A program made the translations under genes and the position numbers. A DNA stretch of 64,000 nt. It comes from Asterias rubens. Its lineage: Eukaryota. Positions 9,071-28,419 of the stretch are shown here, piece by piece; the first letter of the stretch is position 1, and the number at the start of each line of letters is the position of its first letter. The stretch is taken from contig NC_047072.1 in assembly GCF_902459465.1 (NCBI RefSeq), positions 6,014,001 through 6,078,000 on the forward strand, in the 5' to 3' direction. Below the pieces are notes generated by a model. The model saw only the letters and a list, made by a program, of their open reading frames with translations, had not been told where the DNA came from and made no database searches.

Positions 9071-9619
9071 TTTAGGATGCGGGAATACTGTTTCTTAGAC
9101 TTTTAATTTAATTATTTCCTTAAAGCTTGTAAACAAAGCCTCTTATAAAAGCTCTTTCTTAACCTCTCTGAGTGGTTTACACACGTTTTGATACTCCTAT
9201 GCACATTCTGGCTGGCACCCCTAGTGCAGTGACTTGCTTAGTCACAAGTTTCTGCTTAAATTGGAATTATGAGTTATTTACCCACACCTGTGACGTCATG
9301 CTATTGTTAAAATCATAATGGCGCGCAGCTTGGGCTTTATCCTGTACATAAACCACAAGGGAAAATGACTGGGAAAATTTCAAATGATTTGGGGCGGAAC
9401 AAATAAAAATTTACTGGAGCGGGATTTGAACCAACAACCTTCAGATTGTGCTTCAATCCGGTGGTCGTTGGTTGAAATCCTGCTTTATTGGTTGTTTTGT
9501 TGTTTTTCAACTTTCCCTCAAATCAATTCTTGAATTTCTCAGGCTATAGGTGCAGTTGCTGTGTAAAAAATGGTTCATGCAAGATTTTGTACAGCAACCT
9601 GTGCATTATGAGCAAACCC

Positions 9620-9771
9620 AGGGGTGGATTTCACAACAGAGTTTTGACTAGTCTTGTCTCAAGTTAGGGCAGGTTACTCGCCCTAACTTAGGACTAGCAT
9701 TAAGTTTTAATATCTCCTATGACTGTTCCTAAGTTAGGACTAGTCCTAACTCTTTGTGAAATCGACCACTG
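9620..9771. mobile_element. MITE, GGTCGATTTCAC family
   Basis: cag-gggtggatttcac...gtgaaatcgacca-ctg. Confidence 0.7.
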
Positions 9772-9847
9772 GTACCATTTGCACAGTGCCATACATGTTA
9801 ACATCTCTTATATCGTTGCGGTACCCGCTGCCAAAACATAGGATTCA

Positions 9848-10083
9848 AACTGCCTGTCGAGCAACCTCGGTAGTCTAGTTGGTTGGACACTGCTCTAGAA
9901 TTGCAAGGGTGGTGGGTTCAAATCCCACCCGAGTAACATGCCTGTGATAGTTTTTCACAGGACTCGGGGGGGGGGGGGGGGGGGGGAAAGTACTGAGTAT
10001 ACAGTGCTACACACATCAGTGTATGGGTAAAACAAAAAACAAAAATTAATACTCTTTATCCCCGATGCAAATTTAACATCTCT
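9848..10083 (+). mobile_element. tRNA-derived SINE
   Basis: Pol III A-box-like tagtctagttgg and B-box ggttcaaatcc, followed by a non-tRNA body. A second copy lies in opposite orientation at 19303-19533. Confidence 0.75.
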
Positions 10084-10890
10084 TATTATGTTACATGTAA
10101 TTCAACACTGAAATGGGTGTTGGTCAGCTCTTAAAGTACACAAGCTTGCCCTCGAACCATGTGACCGTCTTTAGTCTTGGGAATTCAAATTGATTATGCA
10201 GTTACTTGTGATTAAGCAAGTCATTTCAACATGTTATTCAAATCTCAATCGCAAATGGTGTATTACTTTTATATATGCCAGTCCAAACAATATCAAAATG
10301 TTTGCAAAATGAGAATTGGGATTATTCTCAGTAGTGTGGTTTTAAAGTGTTTACAACATTCTTTAAAATGTCATTCAAGAATATTAATTTAAAAATTTTT
10401 ATCAAAAATACTTGTATTCTTGCAAAATAAGCTATAAATTAATGAATAAAACTCCTTTAACCTTTTATGGTACAACTCAAAGTTATCTTGTGTCATTTAT
10501 GGATCAATGTTTTTTTTTTTTTATACAATGTATAATCAAATCATTTTTTAAGCGTAATATGTTTAAGTTTTTTTTTCTAATTCATTAGAATAATGTACAA
10601 CCATCTATGGTTTTTTTTCTAAACGGCCTAAAGGAATGATTTTTCTCACCGCAATAGCCACCGAAACTATTTTAAAAAGTATAATAATTATGGACATGTT
10701 TAATCTCCTAAAATTACTTCGACTTACTTTGGTAAGCGCCCTCTAGCATTTATAACAGTCGATACTGACCGCCCTCTATAGTTTGTCTAATGCGGACACG
10801 CGCCATTTTTGATGTGTACATTCTATCGAAAACATTGGAAATGAACCATTTGTCTCGCTTCGCTTCCTATTTTACTGAGAGTTTATTTTA

Positions 10891-12955
10891 ATGAAAATGG
10901 CATACCAGCCATCGCAAGTATTCGCCTCGTTCACTCCACAGACAGAAGAAACCAAACATTTGCCGAGTAACGTTCAGAAAGGAAACAAGCTTGTCCGGGA
11001 AGTGCAAGTTTCCTCGACGGGCGAGTCGTTTCTGGCCCCGGACAGGGCGACTGTTCAGGTGGTTGTCACGAGCAGTAAAGACTCGATTGGTGATGTCAAG
11101 TCCAGCACAACCAGACGACTGGATTACATCATACAAACACTGCACACACACAATGTTAAGGTAGTTGTCCACCTTTTGTATTTGTTGTATTTTATTTTCT
11201 GCCAAACTAAAATAAAGTCGACCCAGACCCAGTCGGACCCCCGCGGTACGAAAGCCTCACTATCATTTTTTACAGCAAAGACAAGGTCTAAAATGTTTGC
11301 CACACGACAGGACCCATTTTTTCGCAGACAAGTTTCTGTATCCTGCCAGTGCCACCACTTTATAATTCGTTATGAAATGAGATTCCTTTTTGTTTGTAAT
11401 TGAATGAAAAAGTGGTGGCAGGGTACTTTCTTTCTGTACTACAACTACAGAAAGAAGGTCTACCATCAAAATCAAATCAAGATCGTCAGACATTAAGCTG
11501 GGCGGAGTGAGGGTGTGCAAATTTCAATGGTAATGGTTGCTTTATCTATCCACTCCGTTGCAATGTGGCCGGCAAAAGTCGTCATGCACTGTACAACAAC
11601 AGCCTTTTTAAAATTAATTTGCAAGCCCCTATGACGTAATTTATCAAACTACACACATGTAATGTAATTCTCATATTGAGAAGCAGTCAATCATAATCTT
11701 GTTTACTCCAAGTTCATTTTCTGGTCCAAAATTACTAAACTTCATTTTAAAACATGTTTAAACCACAACGCAAATTACCACTTAGTGACGTCACTTTGAC
11801 AGCTCAGTTAAAAAAAAGTGGCTTAAAAATTTCCAATTACATCACCACTGTCATGAATGTAGCTCTCAATCAACTTGTTTCAATAATTTTCAGCATTTTT
11901 TGTGTGTTAATTTCCAGGAAGGTGATGTGACAATCAGTAAATTCATCCAGCGCGTCGACAGTCTGTACACTATGGAGGCAGAAGTTACCATTATCTTCGT
12001 TGACTTCACCAAGTGCCAGTCGGTTTGTAACTTCCTTGTGGAGAAACTTGATGAGACGGTCAAGCTGCATCCTCCTCACTTCTACCATTGCACAAAGAGT
12101 TTAGAAGGCCTAAGGTAAGTCCCTACCTCTACCCCCTCCCAACCCCACCCCCTCCCAACCCACCCCATCAGGCAATGAGCCATTTGCAGGTTGGATTTAA
12201 ATGATGTCTAGTATAATTTAGACTTGTTGACAAGTCGTGAGTGGTTTGTCACGGTGATAGTCGAGTCATGGTGGTGGCACAAAACATGTTTGAAACATCA
12301 GTGTTGGAAAAGAATGGCAACACAGTAGGAGGGTTAACAAGATACATTTTTTGACAATTTGGATAGCTAGCTACATGTTCACATGTTCAGTCAGCTCTCT
12401 TTATGACAAAGTCACTGGGACTGGCCAAATAACCTCTTTATAAAATAACAGATGAAAAATAAGAAATGTTTCATGCTCCTTCGCTTCGCTCATCCGCATG
12501 AAAAACAGTTTCATTCTAAGAACAGCCTCAATGATTACACTATACGACAAAATGATTCAATTTCTGAATTATTTTAATGACAACTTTGGATAAGGGCCAG
12601 GATTCAGATGCCGATTACCCTGGAGTAATTTATAACAATAATATTATTTCTTTAAAAACATTCGGATTAAATTATAAGCAAAATACTGTTTTGACAACTC
12701 ATTAAATATGAAACTAATAATCCATAATTTTTCATGATACATTTCAATTGAAAATCTATTTGAAAAGAAATTACATAATTCAATATCACCAATAATTCCA
12801 CCGAGGAATTTTAGCCCTTACGGCTCTTCGGATTATCTGTCCGGCCAAAAAACTCATTAATAACAAAGAATTCACCTCTCTCAAGTTCCAATCATGAAAC
12901 TTTGGCCCTTGAGGCTCTACTGAACTTTGTCCTCAGTCCATTTCTCTTCACCGAA

Positions 12956-12995
<40 letters not shown>

Positions 12996-15900
12996 ACCAA
13001 TCAATTCTAACTCCTTTACTTTTCGCACAGAGACCTCGATAAGGCCAAGCGAGTTTCTATATCCCGCTTAATGTACCTGTTTTTGGCTTGTTGGGTTTTC
13101 CACCTACCATGCTGCATGATTAACTCTTCCGATATACCCTTATTGGCCAAATGAGTAGCGCCTCCAGAACGCATGCTATGTAAACCAAAAGACTGCGGAC
13201 GCTCTATGCCAATTTGTTTCATTGCATCTAAAAAGATTTCCCTGCATCTGGTATAACTAAGAGGTTTGTGCTTTACCGGTTTGTAAGATTTTGTGCTCGA
13301 ATGAAATGATAAGGCTGTAAATACATACACATCTTCGCCACATTGTATATCACATTGATGCATATATCTACGTAACATTGTTACTGGACAGTAAGTATTC
13401 TGTGTGCACGACAAAAAAGTAGTGTTGCCATCTCTAAAAATGTCCGTTTTAGAACGGGGAATAAAAATTCTCAACCCGGCTTGATTTTCTAATTCAGTGA
13501 TGTGGCATGCTTTTAGTTGTGCCATCTCATCGTGTCTGAACAGAAGAGAAAACATTAACGTCACATAACAAGCCGTCCTTAATTGTATGAGACTACTTTC
13601 TTGATTAGCGAATTTATCAGCTATAGATCTCACATGATCAATTGTTAAAGGTTCCTTCTGCTCTGGGGGTTTATGCAGTGATTTTCTTTGGCTGATTACA
13701 ATCTGTTTCAGTAGTGGAGAGTCTACTGGGTTTGACTCGATATTCAGGAGAGAATGAAGCCATTTAATTGCAGCGGAAATCGTAATTATTGAACTTTCAG
13801 ATTGCGACAAATTACTCTTATCGATGATAAAAGCAGCAACAACAGTGTCTTGAACTGGGAATCGGAGAGGAATTTTATGAGCAACCAACCAAGCGAAAAA
13901 ATCTCTGCATTTATAAAGATAACTGTTTAGAGTACTCTCTGCTTTGGCTAACAAAATATCCTGAAAAATTTGTTCCTTGAATGCGTCTATACTGTTGGGA
14001 AAGCTTGACCAAAAATCTTGACTGCGAATGACCTATACAGCAATTAAGAGAAAATTAATTAAGAATAGATAATCAACTCATGTAACTTAATCAAATCTCA
14101 GTACAATCAATATATATGGCACATACTGGACTAGTAAACGTATCTGAGCCCAAATAAGAATTCTTGTTATTCCCCAACTCTAAGATGTCTGAACCTTCAA
14201 GAGTTATCATTCCCGTAATCCATGTTCTGTAACAAGACCATAACAAAGGCCAAAAGGGGGAGGAGGGCCACCAGGGGAAAACAAGGGCTCCTCTGCCTTT
14301 ACATAAGTACAAATGTCTTAGAACACTAGGGATCAAAAGTACAGGGGGCACTAACAAACAATTCTCTTTTGACCAATCCTGTGCTAAGGCATCTACGCCG
14401 GCTGTATTTGGATTCCAAAATCTGGAAAAGAAGCGGGACACTTTAGCATTATAATAACTTGCAAAACAGTCAACTGAGAAAGGACCCCATGTATCATTGA
14501 TTATGCTGAAGAATTTGTCTGAAATCATCCAATCATCTAAATCGATCAATCTACTGACAAAGTCTGCTTTGTCATTCATGGTTCTTGGTATCCATTCTAC
14601 TTCTAGACGCACATTGTTATTAATACAAATATTGAAAATATCAATTGCCAAACTATGTAAATCCACCTTCATGCTTCCTACTTCCACTATCTCGGGATCG
14701 GACTCGGTGTGACAGTGGGGGGCCTGTTGCGTAGGGACACTCCCGGGCCCAGTGGCCAGGCATTCTGCAGCTGAAACACACATCATTTGGCATGCCTAAA
14801 ATGTATAATGAGAAAAAATACAAACAGCGAGAAAAACTGGAACTTCATATAAGGAAAACACGAACAATATGGGTAACCGGCAGTGAACGACCTGAAAGAA
14901 CTCACTGGTCACTACCGTAGCTTTATATATCCGAATGCTTTAATGCTTCGGTGAGTTTACATCAATTCTAGGCGTGGCTCCCTTGAACCATAACCAACAC
15001 TTTGCATTGAACGGGGGGCACACTCCCATCATTGATGCTATCCCAACGAATGAAACTAAATTTTCATGCTCCTTCGCTTCGCTCATCCGCATGAAAAACA
15101 GTTTCATTCTAAGAACAGCCTCAATGATTACACTATACGACAAAATGATTCAATTTCTGAATTATTTTAATGACAACTTTGGATAAGGGCCAGGATTCAG
15201 ATGCCCTTTGAAACAACCAAAGACAAAAGGGGGAATTTAACGTTTTACCTCGAAAAAGACTACGGTCACCAAAATTCTTGAAAACCACCCCATCTTGCTG
15301 TCGTCTATCCGAAGTCTTTTGTTTCTTTCTTCCTTCCAATTCTTTGAGAGCAGCGTCCTCAGCTATCTGCACCTTCTTCTGATCTTCGGAAGACTGGTCT
15401 CTCTTGCCGCCCTTCTCTAACTGTTGAATGGTGATCCAACCTGCTCTACTGCTATCAGCGATCTTGATCTTTTGCTTTCTATCCGCTAAAAGGTCCTCAG
15501 CCTCGTGAATAGCTTCGACGACCTTGTCTGTATCACCCTTCTGCAAAAAGGCGACTTTTATTTTATCTAGAATAATCTCTAGCTGTCCACAAAACAGCAG
15601 TTGGGCAGAATTACCGGGCTTGGTCAACTCCTTCGCTTCCAATTTTATTTTGAGTTCCTTCACCGCTGTTTCATCTGTGATAGTGGAGTTAGCCAACTTG
15701 TCGAATTTCTTGTCGAAATAACTCTGAAACTTTTCAAACAAAAGCTCAGTGCTTAAAGCGGAACCGTGCTCCTCTGCATTAGCCATAACACTATCAGAAC
15801 TTCATATAAGGAAAACACGAACAATATGGGTAACCGGCAGTGAACGACCTGAAAGAACTCACTGGTCACTACCGTAGCTTTATATATCCGAATGCTTTAA

Positions 15901-16674
15901 TGCTTCGGTGAGTTTACATCAATTCTAGGCGTGGCTCCCTTGAACCATAACCAACACTTTGCATTGAACGGGGGGCACACTCCCATCATTGATGCTATCC
16001 CAACGAATGAAACTAAATTTGTTATGAGAGGACAGCAAAACAAAGAATGTACTCTTCAAAATGTACATGTACTCTTTATATTGGAAGCAGAAACTACAAA
16101 ACCAACAGTGCTGCATGCCCGGAATTACATGGAGGCCATCGCCTCAATTGCCCCCGTGCTGGTCTTGGTGCCCCTTCAGAACTTTCCCTCTACTCTAGAC
16201 TCTAATGGAAGTGTTAGTGCCCATTGCAAAATGAAGTTGACCTTGCCCTCTCAAAGATGAAATTCCAGACCTAATGCTGTTTTCATGGAGACTTGACTTG
16301 GTGTAGATATTTTGCAGGGTAACGACCTTCAACATTTTGTACAATGTAGCTGGTGAAAAAACTATTACTTTAAAAAAGGGATATATTTTGTATTTCTGTT
16401 CAGGAGGCTGGCATGTCTGAATGCAGTGCAAAATGCTCGACAGAAAGCCCTGGACGTCGCACGGTTGCTCCGTCAGGGGCTTGGGAGACCACTGGCCATA
16501 CGAGAGGAGGAGACCACAGAGATTGAGGGGTCACCGCGAGGTTCAGCCAACGGGAACGACGGACCGCTAACGTTCCAGCAACGCATCGCTAACGCCACGG
16601 TGACAGTGACCGTTAAGGTTTTTGCGCAGTTTGAACTTGTGTCCAGAGAGAAAGGCAGGCAGACAAAGACATGA
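10891..16674 (+). CDS. IRAK1BP1: IRAK1-binding protein 1 / SIMPL (~245 aa; exons 10891-11160, 11918-12114, 16404-16674; start may be 10897)
   Basis: Spliced protein has REVQVSSTG...PDRA...SSK...RRLDYIIQTL, AEVTIIFVDFTKCQSVCNFLVEKLD, RLACLNAVQNARQKA...LGRPLAIREEET and TFQQRIANAT, matching recalled IRAK1BP1/SIMPL-domain motifs. GT-AG introns with compatible phases 0 and 2. Confidence 0.9.
12469..12612 (-). repeat. Terminal repeat B2 of the YR retrotransposon
   Basis: Identical to 15062-15205. Confidence 0.95.
13016..14032 (-). CDS. Tyrosine recombinase (lambda-integrase family) ORF of the retrotransposon, 338 codons, no upstream ATG
   Basis: Catalytic set R (LLFRHDE), K (RSKTD), HxxR (HSMRSGGAT), H/W (HGRW), Y (RYI). 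The frame is open upstream of the track start up to an acceptor-like ttttctcttaattgctgtatag at 14033. Confidence 0.9.
   Translation of the reverse strand, partial: VIRSQDFWSSFPNSIDAFKEQIFQDILLAKAESTLNSYLYKCRDFFAWLVAHKIPLRFPVQDTVVAAFIIDKSNLSQSESSIITISAAIKWLHSLLNIESNPVDSPLLKQIVISQRKSLHKPPEQKEPLTIDHVRSIADKFANQESSLIQLRTACYVTLMFSLLFRHDEMAQLKACHITELENQAGLRIFIPRSKTDIFRDGNTTFLSCTQNTYCPVTMLRRYMHQCDIQCGEDVYVFTALSFHSSTKSYKPVKHKPLSYTRCREIFLDAMKQIGIERPQSFGLHSMRSGGATHLANKGISEELIMQHGRWKTQQAKNRYIKRDIETRLALSRSLCEK
14091..14690 (-). CDS. Remnant of pol: RNase H C-terminus plus DIRS-type DAM-methyltransferase-like domain (RT and RNase H N-terminus deleted)
   Basis: IVEVGSMK..LHSLAIDIF...EWIPRTMNDKADFVSR (RNase H end); WGPFSVDCFAS...AGVDALAQDW...LVPPV...PWWPSSPFWP (MT-like). 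No YxDD RT motif anywhere in the element. Confidence 0.8.
   Translation of the reverse strand: MVEVGSMKVDLHSLAIDIFNICINNNVRLEVEWIPRTMNDKADFVSRLIDLDDWMISDKFFSIINDTWGPFSVDCFASYYNAKVSRFFSRFWNPNTAGVDALAQDWSKENCLLVPPVLLIPSVLRHLYLCKGRGALVFPWWPSSPFWPLLWSCYRTWITGMITLEGSDILELGNNKNSYLGSDTFTSPVCAIYIDCTEI
14653..15786 (-). CDS. Spliced gag-like ORF with CCHC zinc knuckle (exons 15786-15249, 14795-14653; 453-nt intron)
   Basis: Donor CGAG|GTAAAA at 15248 and acceptor tgtattttttctcattatacattttag|GC at 14796 join in frame to give FRGMPNDVCFSCRMPGHWARECPY (Cx2Cx4Hx4C). Confidence 0.8.
14840..15205 (-). repeat. Internal B1-A2 junction (circle-junction-like copy of both termini)
   Basis: 14840-15063 equals 15797-16020, and 15062-15205 equals 12469-12612. 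Confidence 0.95.
15797..16020 (-). repeat. Terminal repeat A1, containing a putative TATA promoter
   Basis: Identical to A2. Minus-strand GGATATATAAAGC near 15878-15888 with an Inr-like CCAGT ~25 nt downstream; the gag ATG is at 15786. Confidence 0.85.
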
Positions 16675-18135
16675 CTGAACTGAGGATAATGTGGAAAGAT
16701 TTTAAATAGTTTACATGGGGTGTGCATTTCTATGGAGAGTTACATTGTACATGTACACGTACAGTGTCAAAAAAGGAGTATTTCATTTATGGACGTGTTT
16801 TGCTACAAGGAAGTTCATTTACTTACAATTATGTTAACAAGAATTTAGATTACTATTTTCAATCATTCCGCCTTATGATTTGTCAGGTCCACCCCCGCCA
16901 TTTTTTAGTTACCCAAACTTTAATACAGATGCAGGCCTTTAACTTCGCTCTTGAAGGGGCACAGCCAGTTTCCTCTGTTAAGGGCCACTTCTACGAGGAT
17001 AAGAGTGTAGATTTGTATTGGAACTTTGCAAAGGCCACCACAGAAAATGACAATTTCTGTTGGTGCCATGTGGATTTTTCGAAGCCTGAATATGTATCGA
17101 GTTATCCCTACTGTAAGAAGACTCTTTTCTTTGTTACAAACCCAGGCCTGTATGCCTCATTTTTGAAGGGGCAAGGGCACCAAGGCATTTTCTCCAAGGA
17201 ATTTGTGAATTTCTACTGGAGCATTTCAAGGGCACCAAGGCAATGGCAAGGGGCAATGGAGGCAATCGCCTCCGTTGCCTCCGTGAAGAATCAGGCCTGC
17301 AAACCTAAACCCGAGACGTTGCATAATGAACCTTTTTGTGTGAATTTTGAAACTTGTCTATATTGTCTCTGCCACAAGGGTTTGTTCTGTTTTCAAAGAC
17401 CAGCTCGACTGATCCAAGGCACTGTGTTCCTTTAATGACAGTAAATTTGATAATACTGCTACTACATTGTACAAAGAAATCCTGCTATTTGATGCACTGC
17501 GCTTCTTTCACATTTACTTTTTGTCAGATATTCTATGTGAACCTTGATCAATCAAAATATATATTGCTGGTGATGTACAAAGTCTGTAAACCTCCTGAAT
17601 TATATTATTTGAAAGGTTCTGGTTCCAGAATAATGGGGGACTTGGGCCAGCAAGCAAATTTTAGGAAGTTGTATATTAAGCAAATTTATTCCCTTGGATT
17701 TAAACAATAGAATGAATATCATGCCAGCAATCTAATACTTTCTCCCCCGACCCCTGACCCAAATTGTTTTTGTTTTGTACATTACATGTCTCAATAAATA
17801 ATGTCAAATAAACTGATTTTTTATAAAAAGAAATAAACACACAACTTGTATGCACTGATTGAGTTTATTGCACAAAATAGCCATGTCATGTTTCAACTTT
17901 ATTTAGTAGCCTTTTTGAGGTATGGTGGACGCTATAGGAGTGCAGTTTGGTTTGGGTGTCTACAGACAAATTAACCCAAACAAAATAGTCTAGTATTGTC
18001 CACCATACTTCAAAATGACTTGTTGCATTTATTGGGTTGAGACGAGAGGCCACTGCCAACTTTTTGCATTTATATCACAGGTCATTTTAAGTTTGTAAAG
18101 TATCTGCACTTGACCATTTATTTAACTCATTGAGT

Positions 18136-21100
18136 TTAGTCAAAGTAATCCTCAATATCGATTCCCGGATCTAGAAGATCTTCTCCATAAATGCTAAGAT
18201 CCATCGCGTTCAAAATAAGGTTCTCAAATGTTTCCTCCAAGTCCGTCTCTCCGATCAGCACAGCGCCTTGCATCCTCCCATCCTTCATCACCACCTTAAT
18301 GTACTCCTTCCCCTTCGTCATGCGCAACAGATACTCAAAGTTCGACCCCAAACCCTGAGCGTTGTACTTTCCCAGGAGCACCACTTTATACCCGAAGAAT
18401 TTTGTCACATGAGCGAACAACTCAAAGCAGAAATCCTGTGGGATCGTCTCACGAGTGGTATCGGCGACCATACACTTCCCGGCATAAGCTCCCATTTGTC
18501 GCGCCTGGGACCACAACCGCATCTGAATCCAATGGGGAGATGGTTCCCACGATGCACTGCACACGTCCCCCGCTGCATAAACATTGGGAATGTTAGTCCG
18601 CATGTGATTGTTAACTTTTAAACCGCCGTCTTTGGCGATCTCAAAATCGGCAGCGAAGAGAGGTATCTTGGTGTTTGGGATGACTCCGGTTGCGCTGATT
18701 ACAAAGTCACATCCATAGAGTTTGCCGTTTGTGAGAGCAACATACACAGGCCAGTTGGGGGAATCACCAGTACGTCCTGTATTTGTCGAGGGAAATACAT
18801 CTGGTGTTCGTCCAGATGAGGACATTTCCTCTGTTGTAAGGACGCATTCAACCTAATTATTAGAGAGAAAAAATTGCGAAATTCTAATTTAAAAACTGCA
18901 TAATGTATATGAATTCCCAACCACTACAAATGTGTTTTAAGGCTTTGATAACTTCTTGATGAAAAATTCGCTCTTTTGAATAGAGGGGCTTATTCCCTAA
19001 GATTTGAGCTACAATGTACACAAAGAGCTTGTTATGAAATGAACATGGTTAGACAGATGCTTTAAAAGTAGAATATGTGTCCCTTTTTAAGACTAAACAG
19101 ATCTCACAGTTTCTTCAGAATGGACTGAAAAACTTTTTTTCATTTTACCCACATCATTATTTCTACTGTCTGAACTTTGAGTCACTGGGCAAAGGTGCTT
19201 TAACAAGTATTCTACAGAAAAAGAAAAAAAATGAACGAACAGCTTCTTGATTATTTTGTTTTGCATTTTTTTAATAAAAAACAGACCTACTAATTTTTTA
19301 ACAGATGTCAATTTGCATCAGGGATAAAGTATATTCATTTTGGTGTTACACTTAGAAGTACACACCGATGTGTGTACTGTATACATTACTCAGTACTTTC
19401 CAGATTTCTGTTGAAAAACTCACAATTTAGGCATACTACTCAAGTTGGATTCGAACTCACAACCTTTGCAATTCTAGAGCAGCGTCATACCATCTAGACC
19501 ACCGAGATTGCCCGGTAGCGTTAGAGGCAGTTTTTGTAAACAGAGTATTGAAAGCATTTATTGGGACAATAATGAAGTTCATGAGTTTTCTTTAGTTCAA
19601 AATTTAACTTTAAATGTGGCCACTTGTCTGAAACACGTCAAACTGGGGAATCGGTGTTGTAGTTTTATTGACAACCAATTTGAGTCACTTTCTTAATCTT
19701 TATTCTTTTTGTGGAGTCTATTTACCTCGCAGGTGTACTCCACATGAACGTGATGTGAACCCTGTACCTTTCCCTCCATCCTCAGTCCAACGCTCCAATC
19801 AGGACCAAGAGCACCCCCTTGTGCCTTGGCGTCTCCCTTTACAGACTTGGTGACTGAAAGGAAAAGAAGCAGAAAGATTATCAATTTTATTATCGGTTTC
19901 AAATGACGCTATCAGTCGATGACCACAGTTTCTTTACTAAATGCAACAAATGTAAAGAGAGTGTCATGGCGTGCCATTGCCGAGGGGTCTACATGTATTA
20001 TCGGTTTCAAATGACGCTATCAGTCGATGACAACAGTTTCTTTACTAAATGCAACAAATGTAAAGAGAGTGTCATGGCGTGCCATTGCCAAGGGGTCTAC
20101 ATGTAGTTCACCAGACCCAAGCTCTGGGGTCGATTTCACAAAGAGTTAGGACTAGTCCTAACTTGGGACTAGTCCTAGGAGATACAAAAGACGTATGGCT
20201 AGTCCCAAGTTAGGTAGAGTAACTCGTCCTAACATGAGATAAGACTAGTCTTAACTCTTCGTGAAATCCACTACTGGCGTTGTTTAGCAGGAAAGTGTGG
20301 GTTCGATGACCGGCCATGACACTTGTGCCCTTGTGCAAGGCCCTTAATTCATAATTACTTCATAAAAAGTTGGGAAGGTAGTGCATTCTGCTCTACCAGC
20401 CAGTCTCATAGTGGCTGATGCCCATGCCTACATCCTTCCGACTGTGAAAGTGGGGAGGAGGGCGGAGTAGCCCTACTGCAGCCCAAGAAGTAGGTGGCAC
20501 TGAGCCCTGGTGGCAGTTGATTAGGGTTGATAGCCCAAATTGGTTAAGTGTAGCCCTCACCTTGAAGTGGCCATTCGGCCTTGTGATGTTAGCCAATCTC
20601 ATCAAAAATACTGTTTAACATGTTTAATTGCATGCTTCAAACTTCTCAACAGAAAACATATTTTGCTGCTCTTCTATTGGATTAACATGCAGCACCTGGC
20701 CAAGTAAAACTATGAGCTGTGCCCCGCATTGGCTACGGCTAGATCGCTGAAAAGCCTTGTTCTTCCCTGTTACTTTGCGGCCAATGGTGATAGCCACGAA
20801 CAAACTACAGTACATTGTAAATGCAAGAGCTGATATCAGTCGTTGCAACCCAAATTAAGGATAAGGTGTTCACGTGTGTGCTGGAAATTGTGCATTGTTT
20901 TTCAATTCTTTCTCTTGACTCACACAACAAACTTTAAAGAGCACTTTTCACTTTCAGAAGTTGATTACTTCATGGTTGGTAAAACATTAACACTGTCCGA
21001 GACTATTTTGTTGGCTGTCCAAACTCTGAATAATACTAGAAACAATTCTTTTTCTCCCTCAAGGAAATCACTAACATCCCTGTATGCTTCATTTTTGAAA

Positions 21101-23346
21101 GGGCAAGGGCACCAAGGCATTTTCTCCTTGGTGTAGAAGAGCACCTTACCTGTAGTATGAGGAAATTGTACATTTCAACTGAGAGCATTTTAAGGACACC
21201 ATGGCTAGGGGCATTGACCAGGGGAAAGGAGGCAATCGCTTTAAGTGCCTCCGTTAAGTACCAGGCCAGCGAATTAGTGAATACAGGCCTAATACTTCAC
21301 GGAGGCAACAGAGGCGATTGCCTCCGTTGGCCCTTGCCATTGCCTTGGTGCCCTTGAAATGCTCCAGTAGAAATTTACATTTTCCTCATAGGGTGCCCTT
21401 TGCCAAAGAGACAATGCCTTGGTGCCCTTGCCCTTTCAAAAACGAAGCATACAGCCCTGTGAATGGATTCCATACCAGTGTATTTATGTCTCTTCAGAGC
21501 TCCTTTTGATTTGTCCTTTTCTGCGTTCAACTGCGGCAGGAGAAACTCTGCAGCGCCAGCGTCGACGAACGTGCTGCTTATTGCATCATCCTTAATGGCC
21601 CAAATCACCTCGCATCCCTCGATCTCGTAAACAAGCTCTGTCGCGATCCCTCCGTTACCGACGATCACCACCCGCTGGGCACCGACCATTCTCTTTTGGA
21701 ACTCTACCACACTCTCAGTGTCTCTGATACCCAAGACAAACGGATTGTTTTCGGCAATCTTCTTGGGTGTTCCGCCGGTGCATAAACACAGTTTGCTGTA
21801 TGGAACCTTTGTGCCGTCTGCAAGTGATAGATACTGATCGGTAACGTTCAGATCGGTGACAAATGAAGAGTGTAAGACGTGAACATTCTTGCAGCGAGAC
21901 TGCAGGCTTGTGGCTGGACGCTCTTCAACATCAAACTGCTCTAGTACTTTAGACACCTGTGCACAATAAAAGTGACGTGAGATACTTAGACAGTGGACAC
22001 TTTTGGTAATTGTCAAAGACCAGGTCTTCTCACTTGGTGTATGTCAACCTAGATGCACAAAATAACAAACCTGTGAAAATTTGTACCCAATTTGTTGTTG
22101 AAGTTGCGAGATAATAATAGAAGAAAAAACACCCTTATCGCATGAACTTGTGTGCTTTCAGATGCTTGATTTTGGGACCTTAAAATCTAATTCTGAGGTC
22201 TGGAACTCAAATTCGTGGAAAATTACTTCTTTCTCGAAAACTAAGTTACTTCAAAAGGAAGCAGTTTCTCACAATATTTTATACTATCAACAGCTCACCA
22301 TTGCTTAATATTACCAATTAAGTTTTTATGCTATAATCACTTTAAGTAACAACCAATAGTCTCCGCTGCCTTTAATAAGAAGGTTTGCCCTTACTTGTAG
22401 CTATTTTAGTGACTGGACAGCAGGACCGTCAGGCATCTGATTCGAAGTCCAATATTCAAATTAGTTAAAGATGTTGTTTTATCAGCTTGACTGATCCTTG
22501 TGTGTTTTAACTGGCATCTGGCCAGTGGGCCAGGGGAGAACACTAGTTCACTTTCAATGTCTTTCATTATTTACAATTGATTTTAGACAAAAGATTAGTG
22601 TTTTGAAACATAATTTGGGGTTGAATAAATTTACTGGGGATAAACTGCGACCTCCAGATTAACAGGCTTGTGCTCTAGTATACCAACTGCACTAACGACA
22701 CATAGCCCGAATGCTAATGGTCTCCCTATTTTATCAATACATGTATCTTTGGTATGGATTGCAGCAGTGCCCAATTTCATAGAGCTGCTTTAAAGCATTA
22801 AAAGTAGCTTACCAGAATAAAGTTGCCAGTCAAAATACCAGTGTCACATGAACAAACTGGGACTGGTATCCTATTTATTTTGGCTAAGCAGGACATTTTT
22901 AAGCATTTTCTGCTGCTCTATGAAATTGGTCCCTGGTCTGCATTTTTCATTTACAATGTAGAATAGGCCTACCAGGGCCCAATTTCATGGCTATGCTTAC
23001 CGCCGAATTCTGCGCCTAGTAACGTGGAGTGCGCATGCGCAGAAGCCTAAATTCGCCGCTAACCCATGAAATACGCTTGCCGTAAACACAGAATTCCCTG
23101 CTTCCGTAAGCGCCGATTCTGTGCTTGGGGTAAGCAGAGCCATGAAATTGGGCCCAGTACCTGTGTAAAGTTGGTGACTGCTTTGATGAGTGGTGAAGCA
23201 GTGATGAGAGTTATCTTCTCCTCAGGACATGATGACGACAACTGTTCAGCACACGTTACTCCAGCTATGCCTCCACCGACCACCACGTACCCACTAACGT
23301 GTTTCTCAGACTCTGACATGTTCGATGTGATCTCAGACTCGGCCAT
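18136..23346 (-). CDS. PYROXD1: Pyridine nucleotide-disulfide oxidoreductase domain 1 (~503 aa; exons 23346-23161, 21956-21476, 19853-19726, 18852-18136)
   Basis: [93 protein letters not shown] and the C-terminus [14 protein letters not shown] match recalled human PYROXD1. GT-AG introns, phases 0/1/0. Confidence 0.97.
19303..19533 (-). mobile_element. tRNA-derived SINE (same family as 9848-10083)
   Basis: Reverse complement carries ggtggtctag...ggttgtgagttcgaatcc and the same 3' body ending tgatgcaaattgacatct. Confidence 0.75.
19888..20105. repeat. Near-perfect tandem duplication of a 108-bp unit in PYROXD1 intron 2
   Basis: tattatcggtttcaaatgacgctatc...ggggtctacatg occurs twice, with about 2 substitutions. 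Confidence 0.9.
20124..20276. mobile_element. MITE, GGTCGATTTCAC family, with CTG target duplication
   Basis: ctg-gggtcgatttcac...gtgaaatccacta-ctg. Confidence 0.7.
21080..21460. repeat. Inverted pair of an interspersed repeat (aagggcaccaaggca / gaggcaatcgcc family)
   Basis: A forward copy at ~21080-21260 and a reverse copy at ~21290-21460. The same family occurs at ~17145-17300 and ~16130-16180. Confidence 0.7.
21986..22375 (+). mobile_element. TTAA-flanked TIR element, family 1
   Basis: ttagacagtggacact...agtctccgctgcctttaa, homologous to 53053-53431. Confidence 0.75.
22766..23157. mobile_element. Two MITEs of the GGCCCAATTTCAT family (22766-22935, 22973-23157) in PYROXD1 intron 1
   Basis: cag-ggcccaatttcatgg...ccatgaaattgggcc-cag gives a clean CAG TSD for the second copy. 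Confidence 0.75.
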
Positions 23347-24184
23347 AACTGACCGCTTTCCTGATTAATTTTTCTTTTGTGAAGATTTTCAGTGAGTTGT
23401 TCTAAATATGGAAGATTTTGGAATAGAAATGAAGCTATATAAGTACATGTTCATCTTTGATGAAGTCCTTGAGTAGGCGATTTCCCTTTGATGTAATCTG
23501 TGACATCACACATGTTTACAAAAAAGCCAGACAACCTGGACTTCCTGCAGGCACAATTTAAACACAATGTGTCAGTGCAATGTGTACTTTACAAGTTTAC
23601 TCTTCTCAAAAATAAGCCAGAGGATACAGATGAGATAGGAATTTAAAAATGTAAAAAAGGAAATCATGAGACCAAAGCCGGCCTCAGGTCGACCTTGCGT
23701 TACAAAAAACAGTCAGCGACTGACTTTTCAGGATCACACTGCACCTGAGCTACATAAGACCATCAGGAACTTTTCTGTCGGTAATTGATTATTAACTACC
23801 TGAGCACAACTGCGATGATTTTAAGACAATCTGAAATAGTCCTCGCTCTAAAAAATAAACAGTCGCAAAAGAAGAACAACTTTTACAGTCTTATCCAGCC
23901 ATTTTAAACTTTGCTTGATGCAGGGCAGGGTTATCAGTTGTGGTTGCACGACCTTGACCTCATTTTCCTTATTTTAAAATCTTATTATAAATGAATATGA
24001 TTAGATTTTATTTAGAGAGATATCTTCCAAGTAAACCAAGCAACAAGTAAAGTAAGTAATACTTATTTTTCCATGATCATGATAACTAGTAGGCCAAGTA
24101 GATGGATGTAGACAAACGTTTTTGCATGAATGAATTGAATGAAAATTAATTTATTGATTATTTAATTAATGATTAAAACATGGT

Positions 24185-24270
24185 ACTCCTACTAGAACTA
24201 TTTCGGTTTCGTCCGGCTATCGTCTCCAATAGCCGGACGAAACCGAAATAGTTCTAGGACTCAGGAGTAA
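24185..24270. mobile_element. Hairpin/palindromic mini-element
   Basis: ctagaactatttcggtttcgtccggctat...atagccggacgaaaccgaaatagttctag is a perfect stem of ~29 bp. Confidence 0.7.
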
Positions 24271-24292
24271 AAATATGGATGGTCATGTGGGA

Positions 24293-24847
24293 GGGTAGCC
24301 CCACTTATGTGGCCAAGGATAGCTGAATCCTTCCGGTCCTACTACTTGCCGTCAACTCGCCGACTTGCCGTCAACTCGCCGTCAACTCATTTTCGCGCCG
24401 TCAACTCATTAAATTTACATGAAAAATCTATAAAAAGGTCTGGGCTAAACTACATATTTCTCATGGTTTTCGGTACAAATTCATTCACAAAAATGACTTT
24501 GTGTTGATAAAAAAAAAGTACCAATCGTTGACATCTTGGGCCAAGACTAATCATTGTGAAAAAGCAAGACGGCGGTCGACAGTTTTTCGGCTTCCAGAAT
24601 TTTTTTTCACGAGAAAAAAACTCAATTTTTATTCCGAAATATGACCTAAAAACTTACGCGAATGCTCTTTGAGCTGATACTTTACAGTTCTATGCTTCTT
24701 TTGTGGATTTTAAATGTATATTGGAGGAGTTGATGGCGAGTTGACGGCGCAAGTGAGTTGACGGCAAGTTGACGGCAAGTAGTGTAGTAGTAGGACCCGA
24801 ATCCATCAGCTATCTTTGGCCATCACACAAGTGCCAGTGGGGCTAGT
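24293..24847. mobile_element. Nested MITEs: outer palindromic element (agccccact..gtggccaaggatagctgaatcc) interrupted by an element with (C/T)ACTACTTGCCGTCAAC TIRs and subterminal repeats
   Basis: An uninterrupted version of the outer element is at ~41843-41920. Inner ends are tactacttgccgtcaac and gttgacggcaagtagtg, with repeated ccgtcaactc units. Confidence 0.65.
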
Positions 24848-24969
24848 GGGAGGGAGGAAGAATTTTTTTGTAATAATTCATAATCATAGGCCTATACTAG
24901 AAAACGCCAACAAAACCTAGCTCATTTCTCGTTATGTTTTTAATCAGAATGCCCCAAAAGAATACTTAC

Positions 24970-25168
24970 CAGTGCATGTTAGATGTTTCGGTCCGGCAAT
25001 TGAGATAAAACTGTGATCGTGGTCATCGTTGTTATCGCAAAGTTTTTAGTAAACATTCTTTCAAAGTGTTGCGAAATCACACTTCCCTACATCGTGTGCG
25101 AAGACAGAACTAAAGAGGGCGCCCTACTAGTGTTGGTGACCTTTGACATCCTATTACATTTGTTCAGC
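24970..25168. promoter_or_regulatory. Putative bidirectional promoter shared by PYROXD1 and Ashwin
   Basis: Perfect minus-strand donor ACTG|GTAAGT at 24969, a candidate PYROXD1 5'UTR exon end with a matching acceptor near 23402, lies 200 bp from the Ashwin ATG (25169). A GAGGGCGCCCTACTAG motif at ~25115 resembles GCGCCCTCTAG upstream of IRAK1BP1 (~10736). Confidence 0.55.
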
Positions 25169-28100
25169 ATGGCATCGGGAGAAAACGAACCATCGACGTG
25201 TGTCGATATTTTACACCCAGAAATATTGAGTAAAGAGGACTTAATTGACGTGTTATCACAGGTAAAGTATTTTTATGAACTAAGGGGAATATATTTTGCT
25301 GACTTCAGAATTCAAAAGCCTCAACAACTGTACTGTGAAATTAGGAAATTCCATCACATCGCTGTTCTGTACACTGGATTTTAATTTTGCAAACAAAAAC
25401 ATCGGTACGGTAGACGTAGGGGGCGGTGTTCGATCATAACAAAAAACTTGCATTGCAAGAACATCTTCTTTTTGCATGGAAAAACATGTTATGTTAACAA
25501 ACATGACAAAATTAATTTGTTACCAAAAAAAATGTTTACTTTTGGGGATTCTGGAACATTGACATCTAGCCTAGCCAGGCTAAATAAAAAAATATTTTTT
25601 TTTTTTTTGGGGGGGGGATAAGTACAACTCTCCATTCTCCAGGTGGTTGCCATGGTTGCAGACTGGAGGGTTACAAGACAAAACCAGTATCGACATACAG
25701 CCTACAGGCAATTTAAACATTTTTTCAGAAAAGTGGGTGACCAGATTTTCAAAAGATTTTACAACAAAATTATGACACATTTATATTTAAAGAAGCACAG
25801 ATTTGATCTTAAACGTGTCAATGAATTAATTTATGACATTTTTTTAAAACATTGTGAAAATATTTGGCCAAAAAAATTCAAACAAAAACTTCACATTTCA
25901 ATTCAAGATGGCAGTTCACATACATTATGTCAGATTTGTTTTCAGCCACCAGACCTTAACTTTGGTGAACTGCACTGCTCCGCTCGAAAACACACTGATA
26001 CAACAAGTCTAACGCTACCAATGATTTTCCTACATGTTTACAGAAAAACATCAAACTTGACCGTCCAAATGCAACGAAAGAAGACCTTATTGAAATCTTC
26101 CATCGGACGGTCACGCCCCTCCCACAACGTCAGCCAAGACCTACCAGGCGAGGGCAGGCTATAGCAAGAGTACAGAATCGGCTTCAAGCTGAGCGTTGTA
26201 TGCGAGGTGACTTGAAAGAAGAACCCTCCAAGGGTACCGTCATGTATGGTTTTCAGAAAAGGTTTGTGATTTTATTAATTGCAATTTTTTTTACCAATTT
26301 GTTTTACTTTACATTGACTCCCAACATCGAAAGACAGACTTACAGGGCTTAAAGTTAACGTTACAGGCCCGAGGTTTTATTATACTATGAATAATGATGT
26401 TTCATAACTTTTCAGTCCTTCAAAATTTACTTTGATGGCTTTTAAATTTCTTTGAACCACCAGCAGTCAGAGGAGCTCATCTTTAGGAACGTCACATCAA
26501 ACAGCATCAAAACACGGACTGAGTCGGTTAAAACCTCCGCCAATTGTTATCAATAAACAAAAACAACGGACGATGTTACTTAACAAAAGTTCCTCCTCGC
26601 CCTCAAAGCAACCTGTGAATCCTGCATGCACCGAGGAGGAGGACAAACCAAAACCTGCTGCAAAGTCAAAAATCAACATTGAACACAAAAAGATCTTCCT
26701 TAGTCGTTCACCTGTGCCATCTTCGAACTCAAAGTCCCCACCCACACTGAGTCCCACTTCGGTGATCAGACGGGACTTCACAACAAAAATCAAACTCGGT
26801 TCAAGTCCTCGTTCAAAGATTCCAGGAGTTGCAGACAAGATTGAGAAGATATCGTTGATGTCGCCAGGAACAGTTGGAAGCTCTGTAGCCAAAAAGACTG
26901 CTTTGAAAAGGACGGCAACAAAACTGAATGGACAGGTACTAATTTAATATTATTTTTACAAAAGAAGTATGCATTGAAAGGTTTTGCCATTATTGGATCA
27001 AAGGTTCATTTTTTTTAATCTCAATAAATGTAGATCTATGTTGCTAATACATGTACATCCGATTTTAATAAGATTTCTCTCCTAAGCTAAATTGGCAACA
27101 ATGGGCAACGCTTAAAGGAACATGTTGCCTTGGATCGAGTTGGTCTTTGAAAAGCGTTTGTAACCGCTTGTTATAAAATGCATGGTTAGAAAGATGTTTT
27201 AAAAGTATAATACAATGATCCGCACAAATATGCCTCAAAGTTGTGTGGTTTTCCTTTTACCTCGTCGACTAATGGCCGACCGTGTTAGTTCGCAAAGCAA
27301 AGGAAAACCACGCAATTTCAAGACATATTTGTGTGGATCATTGTGTTCTACTTTTAAAACATCTTTCCAACCTTATGCATTTTATAACAAACGGTTACAA
27401 ACGCTTTTTATACTGCCAACTCGTCCGATCCAAGGCAACGTGTTCCTTTAACTGCTTCTTATACCCTAGACTGGTACCGTGTATCCTTGCTTAGGATAAA
27501 GACACGAACATGTACTTGCTTTTCAGAACCAGTGATTTCATTGGATACAATGATTTCTTTGGATACACATGCACTGACATAAGCTTTCAGTGTTTTGATT
27601 GGTCCGATGTGATGTTTGGCAGCTGCACTCGCTGTCGTCTGCATATATGAATGTAGGTGAAAGGTGATTATGGACGGGGATTGACCTAGGCTAGGGGCCA
27701 CTCTCTGGTGTTATTCACGAGCCTAGAAGTGTGATGTCAGATGTTCAGGCTACCTTTATACCCTTTCTTGATCGTCATAGAGAGGGGGGGTGTACTAGTT
27801 GGTTATAAATGTTGTCTTTGTTGAGAGTGTTCTCCCCCTTGGGTCTGATCCATATGACCTCCCTTAGCCATTGTCAGGTTCTCTTTCAAATACCATGGTA
27901 TTGTCTTGTTTTGGTGTGGTTGTTGGCTGCAAATGCAATATGGTCATTAGTAGGGAGTGAGTAGACTGGGTGTACTGCCATGACTGCTACATGTAGGTAA
28001 ATTTTCAAATTTGTCATACGTGTATTTGGATTTAAAAAAAGAAACTTTATAGGCCTAATCCATGATTTGCCAACATTACACACTAATTTATTAAAACTTT

Positions 28101-28419
28101 AAAAGGGAAAGAAGACCTTTGTTTTTGGAATAATTCAGCGCTTTTAATCCTGTACAAATGAAGATTACAATTGATAAAAACTAAATTTAATTTCAAAAAC
28201 AGGCACTTTTTAGATATGGACGAAAATCCGGAGCAGTAATGTCCTCGCTGGAGGAATAACCCGTAAGTTTAAACAGTTTAAGTTAATTCTTACATGTAAC
28301 TTCTGGTGGTATTTTTACAGGGTAGTGATTCGGGTTCATCAGAGGTCAAAGTCTCGCCCCAATCCTCTGAAGATGACGGTTCACCAAAGAAGAAATTCTC
28401 CAGGATTTCCTGGCCATGA
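25169..28419 (+). CDS. C2orf49: Ashwin, tRNA ligase complex subunit (~293 aa; exons 25169-25261, 26044-26261, 26464(or 26467)-26935, 28321-28419)
   Basis: ILHPEILSKEDLIDVLSQ|KNIKLD...TPLPQR...RRG, RLKPPP and the C-terminus KKKFSRISWP* match recalled human [21 protein letters not shown]...IPLPQR...RWG, RLKPPP and KRKIQHVTWP*. Splice phases 0/2/0 are consistent. Confidence 0.9.
27112..27451. mobile_element. TTAA-flanked TIR element, family 2
   Basis: ttaa-aggaacatgttgccttggatcg...cgatccaaggcaacgtgttcct-ttaa. Another copy starts at ~63780 and is cut by the window end; a fragment lies at ~19020-19090. Confidence 0.75.

What the first reader, a model, noticed from the sequence alone, without database searches (positions are those of the whole stretch)
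18136..28419. PYROXD1 and Ashwin, two partners of the RTCB tRNA ligase, are head-to-head neighbours
Seen: PYROXD1 (-) and Ashwin (+) diverge, with start codons 1.8 kb apart. A perfect minus-strand donor at 24969 suggests a PYROXD1 5'UTR exon only ~200 bp from the Ashwin ATG, and most of the gap is MITE-filled intron. Known: Ashwin/C2orf49 is a subunit of the metazoan RTCB-DDX1-FAM98-CGI99 tRNA ligase complex, PYROXD1 protects RTCB from oxidative inactivation, and in human the genes are on different chromosomes (2 and 12). Inference: a bidirectional promoter co-regulating a ligase subunit and its redox guard, i.e. possibly unreported functional micro-synteny.
Basis: partly seen in the sequence, partly recalled or inferred. 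Interest (0 to 1): 0.78.

Follow-up and report, generated by a model that had tools for sequence, protein, structure and literature searches.

The report
PYROXD1 and Ashwin share one promoter
In this echinoderm (probably starfish) genome, the genes for two helpers of the tRNA-joining enzyme RTCB (its redox guard PYROXD1 and the subunit Ashwin) start back to back at most about 30 bases apart, an arrangement also found in a second starfish but in none of the seven other animals checked.

Summary
PYROXD1 (minus strand, ATG 23346) and an Ashwin/C2orf49 homologue (plus strand, ATG 25169) are real, spliced, transcribed genes.

The PYROXD1 leader exon runs to at least 25104, and an Ashwin transcript contig begins at 25136. 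The two transcripts therefore start no more than about 32 bp apart, which is a very compact bidirectional promoter.

The same head-to-head pair is present in the starfish Acanthaster planci, with 768 bp between ATGs, the same exon structures, and an identical 12-mer 20-25 nt upstream of the Ashwin ATG. However, the whole Jagunal-SIMPL-PYROXD1-Ashwin block is collinear there. No Ashwin lies within 10 kb upstream of PYROXD1 in a brittle star, acorn worm, lancelet, scallop, shrimp, fly or frog.

So this is a lineage-restricted shared promoter, not ancient micro-synteny. Selection for co-regulation is not shown: the depth ratio varies about 10-fold among four runs.

A side point: a 2026 paper calls Ashwin vertebrate-specific, and this expressed echinoderm homologue contradicts that.

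Sea urchins, sea cucumbers and crinoids could not be tested. The scan had not noted this pair before.

The parts
18136..18828 (-). PYROXD1 last coding exon (C-terminal domain, stop codon at 18136-18138)
   Evidence: E=9e-102 to human PYROXD1, PDB 8orj_B. Pfam Pyr_redox_2 and Rubredoxin_C. The acceptor at 18828 is inferred from reading frame and tblastn.
19726..19817 (-). PYROXD1 coding exon 3 (GALGPDW motif)
   Evidence: tblastn with frog PYROXD1 P0001. The boundaries are inferred from frame and GT/AG sites and are not covered by the laid reads.
21476..21954 (-). PYROXD1 coding exon 2
   Evidence: The exact boundaries appear in RNA contigs of all four runs (table 8). Pfam Pyr_redox_2.
23159..23401 (-). 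PYROXD1 exon holding the ATG (23346) and 55 nt of leader
   Evidence: RNA contigs X1 rec3, X3 rec16 and X4 rec21. The GGGIAG FAD-binding motif is visible in the translation.
23402..24969 (-). PYROXD1 5'UTR intron (1,568 bp, GT..AG on the minus strand), containing an element with terminal inverted repeats (about 24283-24850) and a 66-nt perfect hairpin (24192-24257)
   Evidence: The junction 24970 to 23401 is in contig X3 rec16. Only sub-threshold Rfam hits to the hairpin were found.
24970..25104 (-). PYROXD1 non-coding first exon (it extends at least this far; 9 more contig bases were left unplaced)
   Evidence: X3 rec16 places record positions 1851-1987 on 24970-25104. The X4 contig reaches about 25051. 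The leader holds four upstream ATGs.
25105..25135 (.). Gap between the observed 5' ends of the two transcripts, i.e. the core of the shared bidirectional promoter. The true start sites may lie inside it or overlap.
   Evidence: The PYROXD1 contig ends at 25104 or beyond, and the Ashwin contig starts at 25136. Contig ends are bounds, not mapped start sites.
25137..25148 (+). 12-mer TGACCTTTGACA, identical in Acanthaster at the equivalent place (20 and 25 nt upstream of the Ashwin ATG)
   Evidence: There is one match in the 64-kb window against 0.03 expected. Shared 12-mers between the two promoter stretches number 1 against 0.012 in shuffles.
25136..25261 (+). Ashwin exon 1 (ATG at 25169)
   Evidence: RNA contig X3 rec19. 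Pfam Ashwin profile positions 4-21.
26044..26261 (+). Ashwin exon 2 (conserved core with the PLPQR motif)
   Evidence: The junction is in X3 rec19. Pfam PF15323 gives 27.1 bits, E=5.8e-6. It is 58-59% identical to the Acanthaster exon.
26464..26935 (+). Ashwin exon 3 (Ser/Lys/Pro-rich, disordered-looking; an acceptor at 26467 is also possible)
   Evidence: RNA contigs start at 26462 and end at 26936 in X1, X2 and X4.
28321..28419 (+). Ashwin last exon (basic cluster, then ...RISWP and the stop codon)
   Evidence: Frame test. The last 16 residues are 75% identical to the Acanthaster C-terminus. This exon was not covered by the laid reads.

Best explanation
PYROXD1 and an Ashwin homologue form a true divergent gene pair driven from one very compact bidirectional promoter.

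PYROXD1 transcription starts at or to the right of 25104 on the minus strand. It makes a non-coding first exon, then splices out a 1.57-kb repeat-bearing intron to reach the ATG exon. Ashwin transcription starts at or to the left of 25136 on the plus strand. Both genes therefore fire from the same short stretch of about 30 bp or less, possibly with overlapping transcripts, so basal expression of both is expected wherever that region is open.

The arrangement arose within echinoderms, at least before two starfish orders split. It has persisted as part of a collinear four-gene block. It is not an ancient animal-wide linkage.

Shown: the gene identities, the splicing, the bounds on the transcript ends, the conservation in Acanthaster, and the absence of the pairing in seven other lineages.

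Inferred: that one promoter serves both genes, and that the 12-mer is a regulatory or leader element.
For: - Spliced RNA contigs carrying the 24970-to-23401 junction come from three runs and two coded organisms. An Ashwin contig starts at 25136.
- PYROXD1 matches human PYROXD1 at E=9e-102.
- Ashwin exons hit Pfam PF15323.
- In Acanthaster L002, a 289-aa gene annotated with PF15323 lies head to head with PYROXD1, 768 bp apart. Both genes have the same four-exon structure as here.
- Collinear tblastx matches link Jagunal, SIMPL, PYROXD1 and Ashwin between L002 and the window.
- The 12-mer is identical at the equivalent position in both species.
- In Acanthaster, a good minus-oriented donor (exon end at L002 9444) and acceptor (exon start at 9973) can be read by eye. 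This suggests the same leader intron there; it is an inference.
Against: - Contig ends are not mapped transcription start sites, and Logan contigs carry no strand information.
- The assembler's depth ratio of PYROXD1 to Ashwin differs about 10-fold among the four runs, roughly 1.8, 1.5, 4 and 0.5. This gives no sign of tight co-regulation, although the tool warns that depth is a poor measure of expression.
- In the brittle star Amphiura, PYROXD1 keeps SIMPL downstream but has no Ashwin within 10 kb upstream. The pairing is therefore dispensable.
- The species of the window was not verified by me.
Confidence: 0.78

Rival explanations
1. Selected functional micro-synteny. The two tRNA-ligase accessory genes are kept on one promoter because balanced co-expression of the nuclear-import subunit (Ashwin) and the redox guard (PYROXD1) is advantageous.
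For: - Both proteins act on the same complex.
- The pair, its exon structures and a promoter-proximal 12-mer are retained between two starfish whose PYROXD1 proteins are only 70-72% identical.
- Both transcripts are present in all four RNA runs.
Against: - The unrelated neighbours SIMPL and Jagunal are conserved in place equally well.
- The pair is absent in the brittle star, Ptychodera, Branchiostoma, Pecten, Palaemon, Bactrocera and a frog. In human the genes are on different chromosomes (general knowledge).
- The depth ratio varies about 10-fold among runs.
Confidence: 0.25
2. Neutral accident. A rearrangement in an echinoderm ancestor placed the two genes head to head by chance. The arrangement persists only because breakpoints inside a tiny shared promoter are harmful to both genes.
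For: - The distribution is restricted to one lineage.
- A general four-gene collinearity surrounds the pair.
- The pair is lost in the rearranged brittle-star locus.
- The scan has noted other head-to-head promoter pairs of unrelated genes in this genome (unchecked).
Against: The prior chance that a given gene's divergent partner belongs to the same small complex is low, on the order of 1 in several thousand (my estimate, not computed). A sequence element is also conserved at the promoter.
Confidence: 0.45
3. Assembly artefact. The 24970-25104 'exon' is a chimeric contig that joins PYROXD1 reads to antisense or upstream reads of Ashwin.
For: The tool warns that contigs have no direction and that a contig across two genes shows no single transcript.
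Against: - The junction uses a canonical minus-strand GT..AG at exactly the predicted bases.
- It recurs in independent runs (X1, X3, X4) of two coded organisms with different polymorphisms.
- The PYROXD1 contig stops before the start of the Ashwin contig rather than merging with it.
Confidence: 0.03
4. The plus-strand gene is not a true Ashwin orthologue but an unrelated disordered protein with a chance Pfam match.
For: - The exon 2 score only just reaches the Pfam gathering score (27.1 against 27).
- Sequence and profile searches found no match to a solved Ashwin structure.
- A 2026 paper finds Ashwin restricted to vertebrates in OrthoDB.
Against: - Exon 1 and exon 2 match adjacent stretches of the Pfam profile (4-21, then 22-70), summing to about 41 bits.
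- The Acanthaster exons do the same, and its annotated protein carries PF15323.
- The nine best family-bearing ESM Atlas neighbours are PF15323 clusters, mostly from arthropods.
- The protein ends in a basic cluster followed by ...ISWP in both starfish. From memory, this resembles the vertebrate C-terminus.
Confidence: 0.1

Closest known systems
Bidirectional (divergent) promoters of animal housekeeping gene pairs
   Same: Two protein-coding genes lie on opposite strands, with transcript 5' ends far less than 1 kb apart (here at most about 32 bp). No TATA box is evident to the eye. One partner carries a non-coding first exon.
   Different: The start sites are unusually close or overlapping, and they are not yet mapped. 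The pairing is restricted to one lineage. No GC-rich island is present: G+C is about 0.38-0.40 around the promoter.
Human PYROXD1 (PDB 8orj, 6zk7), the NAD(P)H-dependent protector of the RTCB active site
   Same: The C-terminal 220 residues align end to end at E=9e-102. The Pyr_redox_2 and Rubredoxin_C-type domains are both present, and the length is similar (about 483 against 500 aa).
   Different: There are four coding exons here, against about 12-13 tblastn segments in the acorn worm and lancelet. The genomic partner also differs: in human the gene is on chromosome 12, away from C2orf49 on chromosome 2 (general knowledge).
[quoted passage not shown]
   Same: The N-terminal region matches Pfam PF15323, including a PLPQR motif. 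A long disordered Ser/Pro/Lys-rich tail carries basic clusters near the C-terminus. In human, NLS2 depends on K203/R204 and K223/R224 near the C-terminus.
   Different: The protein is 293 aa against 232 aa in human. The middle region shows no detectable similarity. Binding to FAM98B/CGI-99 and nuclear import activity are untested. The literature states that the protein is vertebrate-restricted.

Membership tests
PYROXD1 (class I pyridine nucleotide-disulfide oxidoreductase, PYROXD1 subfamily) | Best match is PYROXD1 rather than other flavin disulfide reductases, over the C-terminal domain | tested here: met
   E=9e-102 (343 bits) to human PYROXD1. The next PDB family scores 38 bits.
PYROXD1 (class I pyridine nucleotide-disulfide oxidoreductase, PYROXD1 subfamily) | Pyr_redox_2 fold with an N-terminal FAD-binding GxGxxG motif and a Rubredoxin_C-type C-terminal domain | tested here: met
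   Pfam hits on three exons. VVVGGGIAG is present in exon 1.
PYROXD1 (class I pyridine nucleotide-disulfide oxidoreductase, PYROXD1 subfamily) | Binds RTCB and protects its active-site cysteine in an NAD(P)H-dependent manner | not testable with these tools
   This needs biochemistry. Only the human mechanism is described (PMC12263435).
Ashwin (Pfam PF15323) | Match to the family profile at or above the gathering score | tested here: met
   Exon 2 alone scores 27.1 bits against a cut-off of 27. Exon 1 adds 14.2 bits at the adjoining profile positions. The spliced full-length protein could not be submitted. The Acanthaster orthologue is annotated with PF15323.
Ashwin (Pfam PF15323) | Structured N-terminal domain (human residues 10-85) that is clamped by FAM98B-CGI-99 | not tested
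   No solved Ashwin chain was found by sequence or profile search. The two exons could not be joined by reference for a fold prediction.
Ashwin (Pfam PF15323) | Two basic nuclear localisation signals, the second next to the C-terminus (human 97-117 and 201-225) | tested here: inconclusive
   The basic motifs SRLKPPP, ALKR and PKKK/PKQK-x-RISWP are present and shared with Acanthaster. Their equivalence to the human signals rests on position and on a human sequence recalled from memory.
Bidirectional promoter gene pair | Divergent orientation with transcription starts less than 1 kb apart | tested here: met
   The observed transcript ends are at or beyond 25104 (minus strand) and at or before 25136 (plus strand).
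Bidirectional promoter gene pair | Coupled expression of the two genes | tested here: inconclusive
   Both genes are present in all four RNA runs, but the depth ratio ranges from 0.5 to about 4, and depth is a poor measure of expression.
Deeply conserved functional micro-synteny | Adjacency retained across phyla or classes, beyond general collinearity | tested here: not met
   The pair is present in Acanthaster only, within a collinear four-gene block. No Ashwin lies within 10 kb upstream of PYROXD1 in Amphiura, Ptychodera, Branchiostoma, Pecten, Palaemon, Bactrocera or Anomaloglossus.

The most novel reading that the evidence does not exclude
Ashwin is not a vertebrate invention. Echinoderms (and, by Pfam labels, arthropods) have a working Ashwin that imports the tRNA ligase complex into the nucleus. 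In starfish, selection has tied it to the RTCB redox guard PYROXD1 on one promoter, so that the two non-core accessory factors are produced together. This would be genomic-context evidence for Ashwin's role outside vertebrates.
Probability: 0.2. Interest if true: 0.6.

Novelty: new member of a known kind. Interest (0 to 1): 0.45.

Why it matters
Two points matter for people who work on the tRNA ligase complex.

1. A 2026 paper concludes from OrthoDB that Ashwin is vertebrate-specific. It leaves open how invertebrates bring the ligase into the nucleus. An expressed, spliced echinoderm Ashwin homologue with conserved C-terminal basic motifs gives a direct candidate to test.

2. Ashwin's physical coupling to PYROXD1 on one promoter is independent, context-based support that the gene belongs to the same pathway. 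It also offers a natural system for asking whether the accessory factors are co-regulated under oxidative or ER stress.

For genome biology more generally, this is one more well-documented case of a very tight bidirectional promoter, with a leader intron that has absorbed transposons.

Tried and rejected
- **Sequencing-run search.** The look-up of sequencing runs was busy twice before it answered.
- **Full-length Ashwin searches.** Exon 2 alone and a two-species exon-2 profile found no solved Ashwin structure. They found only one 74-aa metagenomic ORF among 5.8 billion proteins, because of the length filter.
- **PYROXD1 representative search.** It lumps echinoderms with vertebrates at 50% identity.
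- **Wasted look-ups.** Three look-ups went on products that are not on record: two were isoforms and one was held only in UniRef. One went on a 3.6-kb metagenome contig.
- **First homologue search.** It listed only vertebrates. A profile seeded with the window's exons then gave named invertebrate orthologues.
- **Sea urchin, sea cucumber and crinoid PYROXD1.** None appeared in the lists, so those classes remain untested.
- **Rfam on the promoter and leader intron.** Only sub-threshold hairpin matches were found. No tRNA genes were found.
- **CTCF-, ZNF143- or YY1-like sites in the core promoter.** I considered these by eye and dropped them as untestable here.
- **Species of the window.** I first read it as a sea urchin. 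The scan's notes on the same assembly piece say Asterias rubens, and the PYROXD1 tree is consistent with that.
Full report
**What is there**

On the minus strand the window encodes a complete PYROXD1.
- The last coding exon (18136-18825) aligns end to end with human PYROXD1 (PDB 8orj_B, E=9e-102). The next best structural family scores only 38 bits.
- Pfam finds Pyr_redox_2 on three exons and Rubredoxin_C on the last.
- tblastn with a frog PYROXD1, together with frame tests, gives four coding exons and a protein of about 483 aa.

On the plus strand lies a four-exon gene of 293 aa.
- Its first two exons hit Pfam Ashwin (PF15323) at adjoining profile positions: 4-21 at 14.2 bits and 22-70 at 27.1 bits, against a gathering score of 27.
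- The two start codons are at 23346 (minus strand) and 25169 (plus strand), 1,823 bp apart.

**RNA evidence**

I laid Logan contigs of four RNA runs (two coded organisms) on 21300-27000.
- Contig X3 record 16 (1,996 nt) reads 21476-21954 | 23159-23401 | 24970-25104.
- X1 record 3 and X4 record 21 carry the same 23159-23401 piece and run on for 62 and 81 more bases.
- PYROXD1 therefore has a non-coding first exon reaching at least 25104, only 65 bp from the Ashwin ATG.
- Ashwin contig X3 record 19 starts at 25136 and splices 25261 to 26044. Other contigs confirm exon 3 (26462-26936).

The observed 5' ends are thus at most about 32 bp apart. RNA-seq assemblies usually stop short of the true start, so the two transcripts may abut or overlap. 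Contig ends are bounds, not mapped start sites.

Both genes are present in all four runs at the same order of depth. The PYROXD1/Ashwin ratio is about 1.8, 1.5, 4 and 0.5, and the tool warns that depth is a poor measure of expression. This neither shows nor excludes coupling.

**The leader intron**

The leader intron (23402-24969) is 86% of the gap between the ATGs.
- It holds one element bounded by inverted repeats (arms 24310-24346 and 24786-24822) and a 66-nt perfect hairpin at 24192-24257.
- Rfam gives only sub-threshold hairpin matches.
- 'MITE-filled' is therefore only partly shown.
- PYROXD1 intron 1 also carries short elements bounded by inverted repeats, one ending at 23155, three bases short of the exon that begins at 23159. 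These are extremely abundant in the RNA contigs.

**Which organism**

The scan's earlier notes on the same assembly piece call it the starfish Asterias rubens. I did not verify this.
- A PYROXD1 tree groups the window with the starfish Acanthaster (support 90/84).
- Both are 66% identical to the brittle star Amphiura.
- This is consistent with a starfish but does not prove it.

**Synteny survey**

I obtained named PYROXD1 orthologues with a profile seeded from the window's exons. I then looked up their genomic places with 10-kb flanks.

In Acanthaster planci:
- A 289-aa gene annotated with PF15323 lies head to head with PYROXD1, 768 bp apart.
- Both genes have the same four-exon structure as in the window.
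- SIMPL and Jagunal follow PYROXD1, and tblastx shows the same genes in the same order in the window: Jagunal at about 7.9-9.1 kb and SIMPL at about 10.9-16.7 kb.
- So the whole block is collinear, not just the pair.

No Ashwin was found within 10 kb upstream of PYROXD1 in the following. Where the locus DNA was returned I also ran tblastn with the window's Ashwin.

| Organism | What lies upstream of PYROXD1 | Evidence |
|---|---|---|
| Amphiura filiformis (brittle star) | No Ashwin; SIMPL still lies downstream | annotation and tblastn |
| Ptychodera flava (acorn worm) | No Ashwin | annotation and tblastn |
| Branchiostoma lanceolatum (lancelet) | Saf4/Yju2 | annotation and tblastn |
| Pecten maximus (scallop) | No Ashwin | annotation and tblastn |
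| Palaemon carinicauda (shrimp) | A glycosyltransferase | annotation only |
| Bactrocera (fly) | mRpS18 | annotation only |
| A frog | No Ashwin | annotation only |

Human C2orf49 and PYROXD1 are on chromosomes 2 and 12 (general knowledge). Sea urchins, sea cucumbers and crinoids could not be reached with the remaining look-ups.

**Promoter conservation**

The 12-mer TGACCTTTGACA sits 20 nt upstream of the Ashwin ATG in the window (25137-25148) and 25 nt upstream in Acanthaster (L002 9270-9259).
- It is in the same orientation in both.
- It occurs once in the 64-kb window, against 0.03 expected.
- Shared 12-mers between the two promoter stretches number 1, against 0.012 in shuffles.
- By eye it resembles a DR1-type nuclear-receptor element. 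That is a lead from memory, not a test.
- Two weaker collinear blocks lie in the PYROXD1 leader exon.
- In Acanthaster a good donor (exon end at 9444) and acceptor (exon start at 9973) suggest the same leader intron. This is inferred.

**Comparison with what is known**

- No paper in the searched library links PYROXD1 to a bidirectional promoter.
- None of the papers read mentions synteny with Ashwin. One of them, PMC13247085, has no occurrence of 'synteny' or 'bidirectional'.
- A 2026 paper states that Ashwin 'appears restricted to vertebrates' on the basis of an OrthoDB cluster. It says that nuclear localisation of the complex in invertebrates remains to be determined.
- The expressed echinoderm gene here contradicts that restriction. 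So do the PF15323 annotation in Acanthaster and the ESM Atlas clusters labelled PF15323 from arthropods (a lead only, score 0.84).
- The starfish proteins share basic clusters near the C-terminus, followed by ...RISWP. In human Ashwin, NLS2 depends on K203/R204 and K223/R224, close to the C-terminus.

**Verdict**

The shared, very tight bidirectional promoter is well supported structurally.

The claim of functional micro-synteny is only weakly supported:
- The pairing is restricted to one lineage.
- It sits inside a generally collinear block.
- It was lost in a brittle star.
- It was not shown to give coupled expression.

This is a new example of a known kind of arrangement. It has a useful side result for the tRNA ligase field.

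Noticed in passing
window 18136-23346; L002 10037-13422; L006 10079-14223; L003 and L004: PYROXD1 has only four coding exons in the window, Acanthaster and the brittle star. tblastn splits it into about 12-13 pieces in the acorn worm and the lancelet. This suggests massive intron loss in the starfish and brittle-star lineage.
   Followed up: partly
window 24970-25113 plus 23347-23401 (minus strand): The spliced PYROXD1 leader (about 199 nt) holds four upstream ATGs, giving short upstream reading frames of 1, 25, 15 and 2 codons. This may mean translational control, but conservation was not checked.
   Followed up: no
window 21873-22445 and 22828-23155: Short elements bounded by inverted repeats sit in PYROXD1 intron 1; for example, the arms 22975-23001 and 23129-23155 are 96% complementary. 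RNA-contig word depths there reach 10^5-10^6, so a very abundant repeat family is transcribed somewhere in the genome.
   Followed up: partly
window 24192-24257: A perfect 29+29-nt hairpin with an 8-nt loop lies inside the leader intron. It gives only sub-threshold matches to plant miRNA models, which reflects hairpin shape alone.
   Followed up: partly
window 7900-16700: Jagunal and SIMPL genes lie beyond the 3' end of PYROXD1, in the same order and orientation as in Acanthaster. The retroelement noted earlier at 12469-16020 falls between two SIMPL exons.
   Followed up: partly
L001 (ENA metagenome contig, 3,597 bp): An intronless 486-aa PYROXD1 homologue (51% identical to the window's) is followed, 31 bp later on the same strand, by an AP_endonuc_2 gene. 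Its source could be a compact-genome eukaryote or a transcript; the origin is unknown.
   Followed up: no
literature (PMC13586215) against window 25169-28419: The published statement that Ashwin is vertebrate-specific rests on one OrthoDB cluster. Pfam-level homologues exist in starfish and are labelled in arthropod clusters of the ESM Atlas.
   Followed up: partly
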